Notes: a model not told the origin generated them from the sequence alone. Positions 26,652 to 61,019 are shown, numbered from the stretch's first letter. The stretch: 64,000 bases of DNA from Heteronotia binoei (GCF_032191835.1 NC_083236.1:24986001-25050000), one strand, 5' to 3'. Made by a program: numbers and translations.

Positions 26652-27334
26652 GCTGGCACTACCATTAGGCAGACTGAGATAGCTCCAGGTGGGCAGCTGA
26701 GTTGGTCTGAAGCAGTAGAAATTTGCTCCACAGACTGAGATAGCTAAGACATTTTATAGCCTATTAAAAATGGCAAAATCTGAGTGACAATTAATAATGT
26801 CACCTACTATACACTGTGGAGTAAAGAATTCCATGTTCTAACCCAGTCTGGGTGAGTTAACAGTTTGGGAAATTCCAGTATGGGAAATTCCTGGATATTT
26901 AGGGGAGAAGCCTGGGTAGGGTTGGGTACAATGCCTTAGAGTCCACCCTCCAAAACAGTCATTTTCTCTAGGGGAACCGATTTTTGGAGTTCAGTTGTAG
27001 TTCCAGAGATCTCTGGCCCCACCTGGATGTTGGGAACCCTAACAGGCTGGCTGTGGATCTGATGACGTCCTGTTTCAAACATGCTAGCCTTTTGAAGTGA
27101 GACTGGTATATAAGACCTTGGAGAACCTCTGCCAGTCAAGAGTAGACAGTATTGATCTGAATGGACTGATTCTCTAGAAGGAAGCTTGGGAGATAACAAT
27201 GTTTATCTTTCTCATTTCTGCTACTTTTGTTTGTTTGTTTTAAAAAACCCTGCAAAAAATCTGGGTCTCCATGTCATTGGAGATTGTAATACCTGGACAG
27301 GAAAATCCAGAAAGATTACAGGAGTGCAATAGAG

Positions 27335-39779: not shown

Positions 39780-40213
39780 ACATCTCCCATGTTCTCAGAT
39801 GAGCAAAGATTGAGTCCAGTAGCACCTTTAGACAGGGGGTTTTTTTAAGAAAAAGCCCAGTAGGAACTTGTTTGAATATTAAGTCATACCCCCTGATGTC
39901 ACCATTGTTTCTCACGATGTTTTCTACAAAAAAAGCCCAGCAGGAACTCATTTGCATGTTAGGCCACACCCCCTGATGCCAAGCCAGTCAGAATTACATT
40001 CCCGTGCATTCCTGCTCAAAAAAAAGCCCTGCCTTTAGAACCAACAAAGTTTAACTTTAAGCTTTCATGTGCATGCACACTTATTCACTATCTGAAGAAG
40101 TGTGGATGCACATGAAAGCTTCTACTCAGAATTAAAAATGTGTTGGTCTTAAAGGTGTCACTGAGCTCAAACTTTGTTCTGTTGCTTCAGAACAACACAG
40201 CTACCCACCTGAA
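39780..40213. mobile_element. Inverted pair of Penelope-like termini with hammerhead motif, interrupted by a hAT MITE
   Basis: Plus arm CTGAAGAAGTGTGGATGCACATGAAAGCTT...GTTGGTCTTAAAGGTGTCACTG; mirrored minus arm to the left. Confidence 0.8.
39833..40031. mobile_element. hAT-like MITE inserted into a PLE terminus
   Basis: CAGGGG(T)n...(A)nGCCCTG; perfect TSD CCTTTAGA. Confidence 0.88.
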
Positions 40214-40271
40214 CCTATGGTTCTCAGACAGATACAGTAATCCAGACATTAGGATTAATAAAGAACAATAA

Positions 40272-42663: not shown

Positions 42664-42830
42664 GATTAAGGTGGACAACCTTGTTGGTCTGAAGCAACAG
42701 AAAAAAGTGGGGGTCCAGTGGCACATTAAGACCAACAAAGTTTTATTCACTAAAGCTCACACTTTGAATAAAACTTCATTGGCCTTAAAGGTTCCACTGG
42801 ACTCCCACTTTGTTCTATTAGCACAGCTAC
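42664..42830. mobile_element. Inverted pair of Penelope-like terminal fragments
   Basis: GGTCCAGTGGCACATTAAGACCAACAAAGTTTTATTCA mirrored by TGAATAAAACTTCATTGGCCTTAAAGGTTCCACTGGACTCC. Confidence 0.75.
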
Positions 42831-54127: not shown

Positions 54128-56002
54128 ATTGTAACAAAGCACTGTAGAATCTGCTGCTAAATTCCAACCATCCTAACATAAAGAATAGTGATAGGAGGTG
54201 CTGGCCCAGTGGTAGAAATATCTACACACTGTCCAATGATGTGCAGACGCTGCCCAAGTGCCTTTGGACATGGATACACATGAATCTGCCTTATTCAGAG
54301 TCAGACCTTTGCTCTGGCTAGGTCAGTATTGTCTACTTTTGACTTGCAGCAGGTCTCCGAGATGTCAGGCTGAGGCCTTTCACATTTCCACAGAACTAGT
54401 CCTGTGCAACTACTAACTAGTCCTTTTAGCTGGAGATGCCAGGGACTGAACCTGGGACCTTCTGCATCCAAAAGTTCCATTTTGTTCTGATCTATCCTGG
54501 CAACCTTTGTCTATTGTATGGTTTAGAGATAATGTTTGGATTGACTCACAACTGAAGCACATAGTAAGGACAGAAACATCAGAGGTTCACACAAACGAAA
54601 AAGTCAGCCAATCCTTCTGTTCTCCGCATCTCATCTGTTACTGATCTGTTAATTGTGTCTATCTAGTCCAAATTATTCCACATCATGAATACAGTCTTTC
54701 CACCCTTATCAGGGCCCTGAGAAAGTCGTCTTCTGTTCTCATGTTTTGAGCGTGTCCTACACCTCATGCCTGATGGTCCACTAGTTTGTTGTCCAGCCGA
54801 ATGGTGACCAAAATAGCAACTGAAGTTAGTATTCTATGAAGGAGGGAAAGGATTATGAGATTTGTACAGTGCCACAAGGTTTGTAATACAACAGGCACAA
54901 GACGATCTTACATTGCTCGCATATGTCAGAGCCCAGCACATGACTCATGCACATTTGTAGCACAGGACACCAGAAAGTTACATTGGTCCTAAGATGCTAT
55001 TACACAGATGTCTGTTTGAACATATTTTTTTCCAAAACAGTTAGTTGAGGATTTTCCTTTTCCCATCAACAGAAAATAATGTGTCTTTTCCTTCTTGATT
55101 CTGAAACGCATTGTAGCAAAGTAGTCCCAGCTGTTAGCTACGTTATTTGGAGATGTAAGTTCGAATTCTGCTCTTCTTACACAATCTCTTACTTCCAATC
55201 TATTGTGAATGTAAACTGTCGCTTAAATAGGGATCTGACCCAAACCACATCGTCTGTAAACATCATAAAAGTTGCAAACTCGCACAGGATTACTTCTGAC
55301 ATTCAACATTGGTTGGAAATTTTTCTGATCTTATGATACGAATGATCTCTGATTGGATATTCCACATATGACACTCTGATTTTCCATTGGTGTGACACTC
55401 TGCCCCCTCATTGGGTAACTGAATTGCTTGATGTGGCGTAATTTACCCTAGAAAACAGGCCACCCCACCTGTCAGGTTAGAGAAGGAGGAGAGGAAAAAA
55501 GGGTCCAGAGAGAAGCAGGGTTGAGAGAAAAAAAGAAGGAAAGCCATCCCTCCTACCCTCACCCCCCCTTCCTCTCAAGAGAAATCTCCCTCCAGAGGCC
55601 TTGCATTTCCTCTGACTGAGCCTACCCTGCAAGATCTAGGTATTGTATCACCTTCCCACATCCTGCTTATTCAGCTTATTCAGCTAACCTCTTGTATTCC
55701 TCTGGTATGCTTGGAATTGTTTGATTGAGATGTAACTATTTGAAACCCTATGCCATAATAAAATCCATTATTAACCAAAGGATTTTCAGTGGTCTATCTC
55801 CGTAGACATAGACAAAGATCCTGCTCACCTCACTTCTCGTAGACCTACCATTTTGAGCTAAGAAATTTTAATATTCCCCAATAAAATGTTATTTGAGGTG
55901 TAACAATCTGACCTTCATTTCCCCAGGCTGCAGGATGTACAGTAAGGAGAGAACAAAATAGGAGTCAATTGCACCTTTAAGACCAACTTAGTTTTATTCA
56001 GA

Positions 56003-56040
56003 ACGTAAGCTTTCATGTGCATGCCCACTTCTTCAGACGA
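56003..56040 (-). ncRNA. Minimal hammerhead ribozyme motif (3' repeat copy, partly decayed)
   Basis: RNA reads CGU CUGAAGA A GUGGGCAUGCACAU GAAA GCUU ACG; stem II has a G-A mismatch and a closing G-U pair. Confidence 0.6.
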
Positions 56041-56658
56041 GGAATGAGGTACAGTAAGCAGAGCCACATATAGCTGGTGGGGTTTGGAATGCCAAGTGGT
56101 ACAAAGTTAAAAACCAATAGCCGAATAGTAAAATTAACAAATTCAGAAAACCTTTGATCTGGGTTGCATTAGCATGGGAAACCATAAAACAGTAACATGT
56201 CAGAATGTGAGAGTGCCTGTTAATTATTCTATTGCTAATAAACCTGGGTCAAAAAGAAGGCATTTCTTTCCCAGAAGTTTTTCCTGTCCAACTAATGTAC
56301 CTTTTAACATGTAACATAAATATATACATCATTCTAGTTTGCCCTTAGGAAAAAATACGTTAAAATATAGTGGAAGATGGGTTTAGTATATGTAATGAAA
56401 TAAAAAGCCAATATCCCTTGTTTGAGTATGTCACTACAAAAGCATTATTCTGATACACTATTCTTAAAGAGAAATACATTGGAATACTGTGGATATATCG
56501 CCATACTTGGTGAAAGTGGGTTTAGCATATGTAATAATATAAAAAACCAAAACAACATCTCTGTTCAGTCCTGGGGAGGTGTTTGTTCCAAGTTTCATAA
56601 TAGCTTGTAATTCAGCAATTCCCCTCTCCATTCTGTTCTTGAAGTTCTGAGAGTGAGT

Positions 56659-59325
56659 TTAGCATCTGTAATGAGATAAAAAACCAGTATCCCTGTTCAG
56701 TCCTGGGGAGGTGTTTGTTCCAAGTTTCATAATAATTTGTAATTCAGCAATTTCTCTCTCCATTCTGTTCTTGAAGTTCCTTTGCAGTAAAACAGCTACT
56801 TTGAGGTCACCCACTGAATGCTTTGGAAGGTTAAAGTGTTCCCCCACAGGTTTTTCAGTTCTGTAATTCCTGATGTCAGATTTGTGTCCATTTATCCTTT
56901 GGCGGAGGGTTTGTCCTGTTTGCCCTATGTAGAGAACCGAAGGGCATTGTTGGCATTTAATGGCATATATAATGTTGGAAGATGAGCAAGTGAATGAGCC
57001 AGAGATGGTGTAGTTAATGCTGTTAGGTCCAGTGATTGTGTTGTCTGGGTGAATGTGGCAGCAAAGTTGGCACTTGGGTTTATTGCAAGCTCTGGTACCA
57101 GTGTTCATGCTCAGATGAGATGTTGTATTGTTATGGGTGAGGTGTTGTTTGAGATTAGGGGGCTGTCTGTGTACAAGAAAAGGTTTACCCCCCAGTACTT
57201 TTGAAAGAGAGCTGTCACTATTCAATAGAGGTTGTAAGTTGTTGATGATATGTTGAACTGTTTTCAGTTGAGAGTTGTGTGTGACCACTAGTGGTGTTCT
57301 GTTATTGTCTTTTTTGGGTTTGTCTTGTAACAGGTTTTCTCTGGGTATCATTCTGGCTTTGTTAATCTGTTTCCTGATTTCATCAGGTGGGTACATTAGT
57401 TCCAAAAAGGTTTGTTGTAGATCCCTCAGGTGAGAATCTCTGTCAGCAGTATTGGAGCAAATGCGGCTGTAGCGTAGAACCTGGCTGTATACAATGGATC
57501 GTTTGGGATGGTAGCTGGAGGCATGCAGGTATGTTTGTCGGTCAATAGGTTTCCGGTATAAGGTATTGTATTTTAACAGTGGTGTCCAGAAAAAATATTT
57601 CTTGCTTAGACTGGTTCATTGTCAGGTTGATGTTGGGGTGGAAGTCATTGAATGCCTGGTGAAATGTATCCAGGGCTTCTTTACCATGTGTCCAGACCAT
57701 AGAAATGTCATCAATGTAACGCAGGTATAAGGTAGGTAGGAGTGGGTGGGAGTTTAGGAAGCGTTGCTCCAAGTCAGCCATGAAGATGTTAGGATATTGT
57801 GGGGCCATGTGGGTGCCCATGGCTGTACTATTGATCTGTAGGAAAAGTTCATTGCCAAATCTGAAGTGGTTGTGGGTGAGAACAAAATGGCACAGTTTAA
57901 TGGCAAAGTCAGCTGTGTTTTCATCAGAGATTATATTACTTACAGCTTGCAATCCATTTTGGTGTGGGATGTTGGTATATAAAGATTCCACATCCGTAGT
58001 GGCTAAGATAGTGTTCTCTGGAAGGTTGTTCAAAGATTGTATTTTCCTCAGAAAATCTGTAGTATCATGAACATAACTGGGAGTACTGGTGGCATAGGGT
58101 CTTCGAATAGAGTCCATATATCCAGATACCCCCTCAGTGATGGTGCCTATCCCTGACACAATGGGATGTCCCAGGTTGCCTGGTTTGTGTATTTTGGGTA
58201 GAAGATAAAAAGTACCTGGTTGAGGTTCCTGTGATGTGTCTAACAGGATATGTTCCTGAATACTCAGTGGTAATTCCTTTGTAATCTTGTTTAGTTCTTT
58301 TTTATATTCCTGTGTGGGGTCTGAGTCCAGTGGTTTGTAAAATGAAGTATTTGAGAGTTGTCTTTGAGCCTCCTTGATGTAGTCTGATGTGTTCATATGA
58401 TGACAATAGCTCCTCCTTTGTCTACCTCTTTAATTGTAATATCCATATTGTTCCTGAGACTGTCTATGGCCTTCCTTTCAGCATGGTTGAGATTCTGCTG
58501 TGCGTGGTGTTGTTTGTTGATCACATAAGTTTGGACTCTCTGGCAAAAGCACTCAATGTAGTGATCCAGTGTCGCATTGCGACCTTTGGGTGGAGTCCAT
58601 GTGAAGGGTTTTTTTTTTCTTGTAATGTTGTTTTGTTGGTATGAAGTGGCAAGTATCCTGTTCATTGTTGGGTTGTAGGGATGGTGAATGTTCTCCAGTG
58701 GAGTGTGTGATGATATGTTGTGAAGATGTGGCATGTTCTTCCTTGTTCTGTTCATGTGTATGTTGGAAATATTCCTTTAGGCAAAGACGGCAGAAAAAGG
58801 TTCCCAGGTTCCCACAGAGCTGAATCTTCTGTGTGGATTTAGTGAAAGAACTGACTCTTCTGAAGGGCTGAATCTGTGTTGTGACAGGTTAACAATATTC
58901 TTGGAGGAGTCCTTAGAGTTGCATTTAGCAGTCTGCAGAATAGAGAGTTCTCTGTTTTTTCGTTGTTTCAGTAGTTCCAGTTGGGCGTGGTAGATGGCTT
59001 GTCTTTTTTTGTGGAAATTTTGCCAGGTAGGTTGATTCCCTGTTGAAATGTCCAGTTCAGAGAGTTTGTCCTTGATTAGCTTCTGTTTGTGGTACAGAAC
59101 ACTAATTAGATGTTTCACTAGTTTCCTAGAAAATGTGAGGCATAACTTTTCAGCATAGTTTGTAGGATAAATGGCTTGTAGAGGATTTTTAATTCTCAGA
59201 ACCTTAGATATAATGTCCAGGTGTTTGCATTTCATAAGAAAGGAAATATCAGTCTGTACCTGTGCAAGTTTCTTTGTAAGATTGATGGAGTTCCATTCCA
59301 TGCTGCTTAATGTGGTGCATTTCAT
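56659..59325 (-). pseudogene. Frameshifted PLE ORF: N-terminal domain, reverse transcriptase, Cys-rich linker, GIY-YIG endonuclease
   Basis: Pieces 58777-59325, 58393-58755, 57542-58396 (DKGG, YLLPKIHK, DVESLYTNIP, TAMG, LRYIDD) and 56659-57405 (CNKPKCQLC..H, NIIYAIKC..C...YIGQTG, GLNRD). Confidence 0.92.
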
Positions 59326-59421
59326 GTAGATAGATCCAAATAGGCAGCTGTGGTGGTCTGAAGTAGTAGAACTAAATAGCAGTCAATTGCCCCTTTAAGA
59401 CCAACTTAGTTTTATTCAGAA

Positions 59422-59458
59422 CATAAGCTTTCGTGCGCACGCACACTTCTTCAGACGA
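59422..59458 (-). ncRNA. Minimal hammerhead ribozyme motif (5' repeat copy)
   Basis: RNA reads CGU CUGAAGA A GUGUGCGUGCGCAC GAAA GCUU AUG: core CUGAnGA and GAAA, paired stem II, palindromic AGCU in place of stem III, 3-bp stem I. Confidence 0.7.
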
Positions 59459-59853
59459 GGAATGAGGTACAATAAGCAGAGCCACATATAGCTGGTGGGG
59501 TTTGGAATGCCAAGTGGTAAAAAGTTAAAAACCAATAGCAGAATAGTAGAATTAACAAATTCAGAAAACCTTTGATCTGGGTTGCATTAGCATGGGAAAC
59601 CATAAAACAGTAACATGTCAGAATGTGAGAGTGCCTGTTAATTATTCTATCAGACAGGTGTCATCAGGCCAGAACTGCTAGCTAGTATTTGAGCCAAACA
59701 TAATCATCCTGATTGGCATTTCCATACACATAATTTCCACTTCTCACTAAACGATGTACCTTCTTTATAGCTTTGAAAAAGTTTTTCTGAAAAGCATAGA
59801 CCTCGTGTATGTATGAGATGTTTTCCACTGTGCCCGTGCCTGGTAAGTATGAG

Positions 59854-60622: not shown

Positions 60623-61019
60623 CAGGGCTTTTTTTGTAGCAAGAACTCCTTTGCATATTAAACCACACCTCCCTGAGATAGCCAATCCTCCTGGAGCTTA
60701 CAGTAGGCCCTATACTAAAAGCCCTGTAAGCTCTTGGAAGATTGACTACATCAGGGGGGGGTATAGTCTAATATGGGGAGGGACGGTGGCTCAGTGGTAG
60801 AGCATCTGCTTGGGAAGCAGAAGGTCCCAGGTTCAATCCCCGGCATCTCCAAAAAAGGGTCCAGGCAAATAGGTGTGAAAACCTCAGCTTGAGACCTTGG
60901 AGAGCCGCTGCCAGTCTGAGAAGACAATACTGACTTTGATGGACCAAGTGTCTGATTCAGTATAAGACAGCTTCATATGTTCAATATGCAAAGGAGTTCC
61001 TGCTACAAAAAAAGCCGTG
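60623..61019. mobile_element. Palindromic hAT-like MITE interrupted by a SINE
   Basis: TSD ATCCTAAC/ACCCTAAC. Confidence 0.85.
60776..60982 (+). mobile_element. Young tRNA-derived SINE
   Basis: A-box TGGCTCAGTGG, B-box GTTCAATCC, CATATGTTC tail; AATATG duplicated on both sides. Confidence 0.88.

What the first reader, a model, noticed from the sequence alone, without database searches (positions are those of the whole stretch)
55963..59650. Neptune-type Penelope element with a hammerhead ribozyme core in each terminal repeat
Seen: both direct repeats carry, on the coding strand, CUGAAGA-A-[stem II]-GAAA-GCUU with a 3-bp stem I (59458-59422 and 56040-56003). The 5' copy lies about 100 nt upstream of the first ATG. 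Established: PLE terminal repeats encode minimal type I hammerheads whose short palindromic stem III (here AGCU) is thought to work as a dimer, and an extra nucleotide between A9 and G10.1 is tolerated in a natural viroid hammerhead. Inference: a transcript spanning both repeats would supply the two halves in cis and excise a unit-length RNA. The combination of RT, GIY-YIG, paired ribozymes and ORF-less satellites is the most system-like thing in the window. The class is known; this family may be undescribed. This copy is dead (several frameshifts), and the repeat differences cluster in stem II.
Basis: partly seen in the sequence, partly recalled or inferred. Interest (0 to 1): 0.7.

Follow-up and report, generated by a model that had tools for sequence, protein, structure and literature searches.

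The report
Dead Penelope retrotransposon with hammerhead repeats
This is a broken, near full-length copy of a Penelope-like jumping gene in a lizard or gecko genome, with the small hammerhead-ribozyme motif this class is already known to carry in each end repeat, so it is real but ordinary.

Summary
[quoted passage not shown] Each repeat carries CUGAAGA-A-[helix II]-GAAA-GCU-U on the coding strand.

Every feature of the motif was published for Penelope-like elements (PLEs) by Cervera and de la Peña in 2014:
- the extra base between A9 and G10.1;
- G10.1-C11.1;
- palindromic 15.2/16.2;
- a short helix I.

The ORF is broken at four places. A CX4CxxC linker before the endonuclease fits the Neptune or Nematis type; no RT tree was made.

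The differences clustered in helix II are real (4 of 12, p = 0.0015). Three of the four sit at CpG sites, so they look like decay, not selection.

Another species' DNA keeps only the roughly 32-nt ribozyme, and its flanks appear to restore helix I by compensatory change.

Nothing supports excision of a unit-length RNA. No read ends pile up at the predicted cut, and the insertion spans both cut sites. Rfam hammerhead models do not score the motif.

The "satellites" are truncated fold-back insertions of related subfamilies. This scan already holds over 100 PLE-hammerhead notes, at least eight from other parts of this genome.

The parts
59368..59650 (-). 5' pseudo-LTR (pLTR), 283 nt
   Evidence: Direct repeat family D1, 96% identity to the 3' copy; 12 differences listed.
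59422..59457 (-). 5' minimal hammerhead motif: helix I CGU/AUG, core CUGAAGA, extra A, helix II GUGUG-CGUG-CGCAC, GAAA, GCU, U17. Predicted cut between 59425 and 59424. All core positions intact, with G10.1-C11.1.
   Evidence: Features match the min-HHR description in PMC4209133. No Rfam hammerhead hit.
59326..59367 (-). Start of the internal region after the 5' pLTR, with the AC-rich stretch (CAGACCACCACAGCUG). It corresponds to the ~40-nt 'tail' present at one end of other copies in the window.
   Evidence: Alignment A2. Tail and internal RT initiation are described in PMC8557442 and PMC11167929. The role here is inferred.
56659..59325 (-). Decayed single ORF (N-terminal region, RT, linker, GIY-YIG EN). 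The frame breaks at about 58880-58825, in the A-run near 58625-58612, at 58396, and at 57565-57568, where about 7 codons are also missing.
   Evidence: Translation, motif frames, tblastn of homologues. Part of the reads from other copies (4 of 13 and 23 of 51 in the two RNA runs) differ in length at 58395.
57542..58396 (-). Reverse transcriptase core. The DKG motif is just upstream at 58422-58411; YIDD is at 57718-57707.
   Evidence: Pfam RVT_1 E = 2.2e-13. Best relatives: Podarcis lilfordi 78%, Eublepharis macularius 71%.
56659..57405 (-). RT thumb/linker and GIY-YIG endonuclease, apparently unbroken. CX4CxxC linker at 57087-57061; GIY..CxxC at 56973-56944; YIG at 56934-56914.
   Evidence: Pfam GIY-YIG E = 4.8e-6. 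In alignment A1 the first linker cysteine (C107) and the two cysteines between GIY and YIG (C151, C154) are invariant, C112 is nearly so, and Y147 and I160 are invariant.
56372..56779 (-). Three tandem copies of a ~135-nt unit covering the last ~45 codons of the ORF and the start of the 3' UTR.
   Evidence: Repeat families D2 and D3; self-BLAST.
55950..56232 (-). 3' pseudo-LTR, 283 nt. It ends without the AC-rich tail. No target-site duplication of 6 nt or more was found.
56004..56039 (-). 3' minimal hammerhead motif with the core intact. Helix II is degraded (G.U at 10.1-11.1, G/A mismatch at 10.4-11.4). Predicted cut between 56007 and 56006.
40032..40218 (+). Fold-back mini-insertion of a related PLE subfamily (74-80% alike). 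Its right arm carries a hammerhead motif at 40092-40121 and the tail. The arms join 1-5 nt 5' of the core.
42677..42820 (.). Fold-back mini-insertion of a related PLE subfamily, joined downstream of the ribozyme core, with the tail on the left arm only.
26677..26720 (-). Short fragment matching the AC-rich tail region only.

Best explanation
This is one old, dead, near full-length insertion of a canonical endonuclease-bearing Penelope-like retrotransposon. By its EN linker it is of Neptune type. The layout is pLTR-ORF-pLTR on the minus strand.

The two pLTRs most likely exist because the copy was reverse-transcribed from a more-than-unit-length RNA, such as a tandem or read-through transcript. 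The GIY-YIG endonuclease nicks the target, and the RT starts inside the RNA near the AC-rich 'tail' just downstream of a pLTR. That produces one full unit plus a second pLTR. This part is inferred from published PLE work.

Each pLTR carries the class's minimal type I hammerhead. Helix III cannot close in a monomer, because A15.1 and U16.1 would enclose only 2 nt. Cleavage would therefore need a second copy pairing through the AGCU palindrome, or help from the element's protein.

The motif is under selection in the wider family: another species keeps only the ribozyme, with changed but still pairing helix I flanks. Its role in the life cycle is not settled. My best guess is slow, assisted trimming of multi-unit transcripts, not an obligatory step of insertion.

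In this locus the 5' ribozyme still has an intact core and helix II. The 3' one has lost helix II pairs to CpG decay.
For: - Repeats and coordinates.
- RT and GIY-YIG domains.
- DKG motif, the CxxC cysteines between GIY and YIG, and the CX4CxxC linker conserved across 15 relatives.
- Four frame breaks.
- Motif features identical to the published PLE min-HHR, including the extra nucleotide between 9 and 10.1, G10.1-C11.1 and palindromic 15.2-16.2.
- pLTR, tail and inverted 5'-truncated copies as the typical PLE architecture, all seen in this window.
- Organism E DNA contigs (X7) align at 88% or better only over 56006-56037 and 59423-59455. The loose-end consensus of their flanks reads GUAU..AUAC for helix I against CGU..ACG or AUG here. 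That is one compensatory pair, one one-sided change and one gained pair.
- A more abundant subfamily in the same species keeps CUGAGGA-A-GUGUGC-[7-nt loop]-GCACAU-GAAAGCUU.
- Read depth rises 10- to 15-fold toward the 3' end, as expected for 5'-truncated retrocopies.
- No read ends at the cut site. The same was reported for the Anolis Poseidon element, whose hammerhead is protein-assisted and dispensable for insertion in vitro.
Against: - No Rfam hammerhead model scores the motif, even on a 71-nt stretch at E up to 10.
- Helix I has only 3 bp, and the predicted energies are weak (-8.3 kcal/mol for 64 nt).
- The cofold optimum for the 5'+3' pair (and 3'+3') joins two copies through helix II and helix I strands; none of the three cofolds shows the canonical AGCU/AGCU helix III.
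- No double compensatory change in helix II was seen among the four copies in the window; there are only one-sided changes and one broken pair.
- The helix I covariation rests on noisy loose-end consensus sequences (agreement 0.42-0.69).
- No target-site duplication was found.
- Neptune placement rests on one motif, not on a tree.
- Cleavage was not and could not be tested.
Confidence: 0.88

Rival explanations
1. The two hammerheads in a transcript spanning both pLTRs pair in cis through the AGCU palindrome, cut, and release a unit-length RNA (possibly circularised). That RNA is the obligatory transposition intermediate.
For: This is the model proposed for PLE min-HHRs. The palindromic 15.1-16.1 AGCU is present in both copies. 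The motif is conserved across subfamilies and species. Rolling reverse transcription of a circle could also give pLTR-ORF-pLTR copies.
Against: No pile-up of read starts or ends at 56007/56006 or 59425/59424, at depths of about 25-65 (5' site) and 120-360 (3' site) reads per run. The insertion contains 226 nt upstream of the 5' cut site and 57 nt downstream of the 3' cut site, so a linear cleaved unit was not its template. Hammerhead-dead mutants of the Anolis Poseidon element insert normally in vitro, and unprocessed RNA is the main substrate. Naiad PLEs thrive without hammerheads. Reported in vitro activity of min-HHR dimers is low.
Confidence: 0.2
2. The hammerhead-like box is a passenger or has a non-cleaving job, such as a protein-binding or RT-positioning hairpin or part of the pLTR promoter. 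Its likeness to a ribozyme core is retained for that reason.
For: The role of HHRs in EN+ PLEs is called unclear, and they may 'simply parasitize PLEs'. Functions other than self-cleavage were not ruled out by the discoverers. Helix I and III are very short here. Rfam models fail.
Against: All 11 invariant core positions plus A15.1-U16.1 and a non-G at position 17 are kept in three independently decaying copies, and in another species where the flanks have diverged. C3/G8 mutants of the Anolis element lose RNA cleavage, and the double mutant regains it.
Confidence: 0.15
3. The element belongs to the Penelope/Poseidon clade (or another EN+ clade), not to Neptune.
For: No RT tree with labelled references was made. 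Neptune itself is paraphyletic and weakly supported in published trees. The best-studied lizard PLE is a Poseidon.
Against: The CX2-5CxxC linker, stated to be absent from Penelope/Poseidon and present in Neptune and Nematis, is present here and conserved in relatives. DKG, not DKA or DKT, argues against Naiad and Hydra. The CCHH-type cysteines between GIY and YIG also argue against Hydra, and the C-terminal EN argues against Naiad and Chlamys.
Confidence: 0.15
4. The motif is a chance match to a loose descriptor.
For: The descriptor is short. Pattern scans of public metagenome and viral contigs returned only chance matches inside microbial coding DNA.
Against: There are 3 hits against 0.04 expected in the window. 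All lie at the homologous place in PLE 3' or pLTR sequence, on the coding strand, with a pairing helix II and every published min-HHR trait.
Confidence: 0.01

Closest known systems
Minimal hammerhead ribozymes of metazoan Penelope-like elements (Cervera and de la Peña 2014, PMC4209133)
   Same: CUGANGA and GAAA boxes; one unpaired nucleotide between A9 and G10.1; G10.1-C11.1; palindromic 15.2/16.2 with no loop 3; short helix I; presence in both pLTRs on the coding strand; many dispersed single copies from truncated elements. Already reported for Neptune elements of fishes and for reptiles (turtle, snakes).
   Different: Helix I has 3 bp here (4-5 bp in the Schistosoma families, 2 bp in D. virilis). 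Helix II has 5 bp with a tetraloop, against the 6-8 bp stressed in the paper. A gecko or lizard family was not among the examples named there.
Neptune clade of EN+ PLEs (Arkhipova 2006; Craig et al. 2021, PMC8557442)
   Same: [quoted passage not shown] CX2-5CxxC Zn-finger-like linker upstream of the EN. pLTRs, a tail, and inverted 5'-truncated copies.
   Different: Clade membership by RT phylogeny was not tested. No (TA)n target preference is visible at this insertion.
PAc, the Poseidon element of Anolis carolinensis (PMC11167929)
   Same: A squamate PLE with pLTR-ORF-pLTR layout, a hammerhead near the ORF start, RT initiation in an AC-rich region that gives the 'tail', and no RNA-seq read ends at the ribozyme cut site.
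   Different: PAc is Penelope/Poseidon type, the clade that Craig et al. state lacks the CX2-5CxxC linker. Its ORF begins inside helix II and the cut site lies 26 nt after the start codon. Here the whole motif lies about 100 nt upstream of the first ATG.
Non-LTR retrozymes of animals (PMC7229834; bioRxiv 10.64898/2026.07.22.740005)
   Same: Hammerhead-bearing non-autonomous repeats related to PLE pLTRs.
   Different: Retrozymes are tandem arrays of short hammerhead units that give circular RNAs. The short copies in this window are single fold-back, 5'-truncated insertions, not tandem arrays.

Membership tests
PLE minimal hammerhead (min-HHR) | Conserved core boxes C3-U4-G5-A6-N7-G8-A9 and G12-A13-A14, A15.1-U16.1, and a non-G at position 17 | tested here: met
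   CUGAAGA and GAAA, then A-GC-U, then U17 in both pLTR copies and in the 40092 copy.
PLE minimal hammerhead (min-HHR) | [quoted passage not shown] | tested here: met
   An extra A at 59447 and at 56029. The feature is stated in PMC4209133.
PLE minimal hammerhead (min-HHR) | G10.1-C11.1 closing a helix II of at least 4 bp | tested here: met
   The 5' copy has G-C and 5 bp plus a 4-nt loop. The 3' copy has decayed to G.U plus one mismatch, and the 40092 copy has G.U with 5 bp.
PLE minimal hammerhead (min-HHR) | Palindromic 15.2/16.2 without loop 3 (dimer-type helix III) | tested here: met
   A-G-C-U is self-complementary. As a monomer it would enclose only 2 nt, so it cannot close (inference from hairpin geometry).
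PLE minimal hammerhead (min-HHR) | Covariation in helices across family copies | tested here: inconclusive
   Helix II shows only one-sided changes among 4 copies in the window. Helix I shows an apparent compensatory change in another species' copies, taken from noisy loose-end consensus sequences.
PLE minimal hammerhead (min-HHR) | Site-specific self-cleavage | not testable with these tools
   No pile-up of RNA read ends at the predicted site. This is weak negative evidence only, since most reads come from dead copies inside other transcripts.
Rfam hammerhead families (Hammerhead_1, _3, _II, HH9, HH10) | Match to the covariance model at or near the gathering score | tested here: not met
   No hammerhead hit at the gathering threshold on the whole window, nor at E up to 10 on 401-nt and 71-nt stretches. 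My inference is that these models expect a closed helix III and a longer helix I.
Canonical EN+ Penelope-like element | [quoted passage not shown] | tested here: met
   Pfam RVT_1 and GIY-YIG. IIYAIKCQQC..LYIGQTG, with invariant C151 and C154 in alignment A1.
Canonical EN+ Penelope-like element | pLTRs from partial tandem structure, a 30-40-nt tail at one end, and inverted 5'-truncated copies | tested here: met
   283-nt pLTRs. The tail is present in the 40092, 42749-left and 26720 copies and absent at the 3' end of the main copy. Fold-backs are shown.
Neptune clade | CX2-5CxxC Zn-finger-like linker between RT and EN | tested here: met
   CNKPKCQLC at 57087-57061. The first cysteine (C107) is invariant and the second (C112) nearly invariant in relatives from lizards, turtles, sharks and a crinoid; the third is not conserved in the shark and eukprot rows. 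The criterion comes from PMC8557442 and is shared with Nematis.
Neptune clade | Placement of the RT within Neptune in a phylogeny with labelled references | not tested
   No labelled Neptune, Poseidon or Nematis sequences were available through the tools. Database relatives carry no clade names.

The most novel reading that the evidence does not exclude
This may be an undescribed squamate Neptune-type family whose ribozyme pairs with a second copy through two self-complementary helices at once: the near-palindromic helix II and AGCU. The same hairpin would act at the cDNA level as the preferred turning point that creates the very common fold-back mini-insertions. That would link the ribozyme hairpin mechanistically to the inverted-repeat insertion architecture.
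Probability: 0.07. Interest if true: 0.5.

Novelty: new member of a known kind. Interest (0 to 1): 0.15.

Why it matters
It matters little beyond annotation. The locus is a clean, near full-length example of the autonomous element type behind the very many short hammerhead-bearing Penelope fragments that this scan keeps flagging in this genome. That lets those fragments be read as ordinary truncated or fold-back copies.

It also gives two small cautions for people who scan vertebrate genomes for ribozymes:
- The C11.1-G12 step and CpG-rich helix II of a hammerhead decay fast in methylated genomes, so clustered differences in helix II are not evidence of selection.
- Rfam models miss this minimal class.

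The open question in the field is what PLE hammerheads do. This locus does not answer it.

Tried and rejected
- Rfam at the gathering threshold and at E up to 10 on 401-nt and 71-nt stretches gave no hammerhead hit.
- Pattern scans of metagenome and viral contigs for the family's hammerhead gave 7 loci, all chance matches inside microbial coding DNA with no helix II.
- Earlier-findings look-ups by place, by sequence and by several word sets returned nothing for this locus or for full-length copies.
- A search for a target-site duplication found nothing of 6 nt or more.
- ViennaRNA folding of monomers and dimers gave weak energies. The dimer optima pair the two copies mainly through helix II (plus helix I strands in two of three cofolds); the canonical AGCU/AGCU helix III does not form, so thermodynamic folding neither supports nor excludes the double-hammerhead.
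- Pfam names for PF26215 and PF28514, listed for relatives, are not in the local Pfam copy.
- I considered and rejected a retrozyme or satellite reading of the short copies, because they are single fold-back insertions.
- I considered and rejected selection as the cause of the helix II differences, because 3 of 4 are CpG transitions.
- I did not use the big representative protein search. The family scans left nothing open.

Full report
**What is there**

Reading the minus strand from 59650 to 55950 shows a 3,701-nt unit bounded by two 283-nt direct repeats, 59650-59368 and 56232-55950. They differ at 12 positions, giving 96% identity.

Between them lies one decayed reading frame. Pfam finds a reverse transcriptase (RVT_1, E = 2.2e-13) in 58396-57542 and a GIY-YIG nuclease (E = 4.8e-6) in 57405-56659. 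The translation shows the landmarks of Penelope-like elements (PLEs):
- DKGG at 58422-58411;
- YIDD at 57718-57707;
- a CX4CxxC linker, CNKPKCQLC, at 57087-57061;
- GIY..CxxC..YIG at 56973-56914, with the cysteines invariant in an alignment of 15 relatives.

Alignment of database relatives to the DNA shows the frame switching four times:
- near 58880-58825;
- in an A-run near 58625-58612;
- at 58396;
- at 57565-57568, where about seven codons are also missing.

The last 248 codons look unbroken.

**The hammerhead motif**

The pattern CTGANGA..GAAAGCTT occurs three times in the window against 0.04 expected. It is found once in each repeat on the coding strand and once at 40092-40121.

The exact parts are given. 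In the 5' repeat they are:
- helix I, CGU (59457-59455) pairing with AUG (59424-59422);
- core CUGAAGA (59454-59448);
- one extra A (59447);
- helix II, GUGUG-CGUG-CGCAC (59446-59433);
- GAAA (59432-59429);
- GCU (59428-59426);
- U17 (59425).

The 3' repeat has the same layout at 56039-56004. The predicted cuts fall between 59425 and 59424 and between 56007 and 56006. The first ATG (59325) is 99 nt after the 5' cut.

A15.1-G-C-U16.1 would enclose only two bases, so helix III cannot close within one molecule. The AGCU palindrome could pair with a second copy.

A simple descriptor that requires at least 4 bp in helix II accepts the 5' copy and the 40092 copy. The 3' copy passes only at 3 bp.

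No Rfam hammerhead model scores any copy, even on a 71-nt stretch at E up to 10. The motif lies outside the curated canonical families.

**Comparison with what is published**

Cervera and de la Peña (PMC4209133) described exactly this. They found minimal type I hammerheads in both pLTRs of all PLEs they examined. [quoted passage not shown] They named Neptune elements of fishes and reported similar motifs in reptiles (turtle and snakes).

Craig et al. (PMC8557442) give three points that bear on this locus:
- the CX2-5CxxC linker is present in Neptune and Nematis and absent in Penelope/Poseidon;
- canonical hammerheads are universal in the C-terminal EN+ clades;
- typical insertions are partial tandems (pLTRs), often with an inverted 5'-truncated copy and a 30-40-nt tail at one end.

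All of this is seen in the window. "Neptune-type" passes the one diagnostic I could test. I could not make an RT tree because no labelled references were reachable.

**The helix II differences**

Four of the 12 pLTR differences fall in the 14-nt helix II (p = 0.0015). Three of those four are CpG-to-TpG or CpG-to-CpA transitions relative to the 5' copy, at 59440, 59436 and 59433. A fifth difference, in helix I (59423), is the same kind of change in the other direction.

The simplest reading is CpG decay. A CpG-rich hairpin, together with the unavoidable C11.1-G12 CpG, decays quickly in a methylated genome. The 3' ribozyme lost G10.1-C11.1 (now G.U) and gained a G/A mismatch, while the 5' copy kept the older CpG form.

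**Other copies in the window**

- 40032-40218 is a fold-back. Its arms (40059-40087 and 40093-40121) join 1-5 nt 5' of the ribozyme core, and its right arm carries the AC-rich tail.
- 42677-42820 is a fold-back joined downstream of the core, with the tail only on the left arm.
- 26677-26720 is a tail-only scrap.

These are standard truncated PLE insertions, not tandem retrozymes.

The main copy's 3' end (about 55950) stops just before the AC-rich stretch that follows the 5' pLTR (59367-59330). No target-site duplication of 6 nt or more is visible.

**Evidence from sequencing runs**

Two raw RNA runs of the same species label lay 1,681 and 4,923 reads on the element. Most are 90-95% alike and few reach 99%. 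They fall equally on both orientations, and nearly half run on into unlike sequence. They therefore come mainly from other, often truncated copies inside other transcripts.

Depth rises 10- to 15-fold toward the 3' pLTR. No pile-up of read starts or ends is listed at either predicted cut site.

Loose-end consensus sequences show a more abundant subfamily in the same species with CUGAGGA-A-GUGUGC-[7-nt loop]-GCACAU-GAAAGCUU. The core and helix II are kept while the loop differs.

DNA contigs of another organism (X7) match at 88% or better only across 56006-56037 and 59423-59455, which is the ribozyme itself, plus the 3' half of the ORF. The consensus of their unlike flanks gives helix I as GUAU/AUAC, against CGU/ACG or CGU/AUG here. 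That amounts to one compensatory pair, one one-sided change and one extra pair.

This is the best sign of selection on the fold. It rests on noisy consensus sequences (agreement 0.42-0.69).

**How it most likely works**

Shown here: the anatomy, the domains, the breaks, the motif, and its conservation beyond the flanks.

Inferred from published work: the endonuclease nicks the target and the RT copies a more-than-unit-length RNA, starting internally near the AC-rich tail. This yields pLTR-ORF-pLTR (PMC11167929; PMC8557442).

This insertion contains 226 nt upstream of the 5' cut site and 57 nt downstream of the 3' cut site. Its template was therefore not a linear, ribozyme-trimmed unit. A circularised unit copied more than once round is not excluded.

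For the Anolis Poseidon element:
- the hammerhead is protein-assisted;
- core mutants abolish RNA cleavage but not insertion in vitro;
- RNA-seq shows no ends at the cut site.

That matches what I see here. I favour slow, assisted trimming of tandem transcripts, or an accessory role.

**Relatives**

The closest annotated protein fragments are 78% identical (Podarcis lilfordi) and 71% (Eublepharis macularius) in the RT. In the EN part they are 60-72% identical (lizards and turtles). More distant kin occur in crocodilians, amphibians, sharks, echinoderms, molluscs, ticks and corals.

Nothing at 90% or more was found. The search only sees proteins of 0.55-1.75 times the query length, so this says nothing about full-length or unannotated copies. 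Whether the family is already in Repbase or Dfam could not be tested.

**Limits**

A proper covariation test on many copies was not possible.
- Public metagenome and viral scans gave only chance hits.
- I built no consensus and no mended frame of the element.

**Verdict**

This is a real, correctly recognised, but ordinary feature. It is a dead near full-length PLE copy with the class's published minimal hammerheads. The scan's index holds 113 notes on PLE hammerheads, and all eight it showed come from other parts of this genome.

Noticed in passing
window 56372-56779 (-): Three tandem copies of a ~135-nt unit repeat the last ~45 codons of the PLE ORF and the start of its 3' UTR. Read depth dips over the middle copy, so the triplication is probably private to this copy or a small subfamily.
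   Followed up: partly
window 60779-60851 (+): A tRNA-Pro(GGG)-like sequence (Rfam tRNA 51.6 bits; also called by ARAGORN) with acceptor-stem mismatches and an encoded CCA end. It is more likely a tRNA-derived SINE head or a tRNA retrocopy than a working gene.
   Followed up: partly
window 40059-40121 (+): The two arms of the fold-back mini-insertion meet 1-5 nt 5' of the hammerhead core, so the inverted copy starts almost exactly at the ribozyme's 5' edge.
   Followed up: partly
window 59423-59455 and 56006-56037 (reads of run X7): In another organism's DNA only the ~32-nt ribozyme is kept at 88% or better while both flanks are unlike. The upstream two thirds of the pLTR (56154-56280, 59456-59700) has almost no depth there.
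   Followed up: partly
window 39820-40030 (+): Just upstream of the fold-back insertion lie three similar ~60-nt units of the form AAAAAGCCC(A/T)G(C/T)AGGAAC..CCCCCTGATG. This is a short tandem or SINE-like repeat that I did not study.
   Followed up: no
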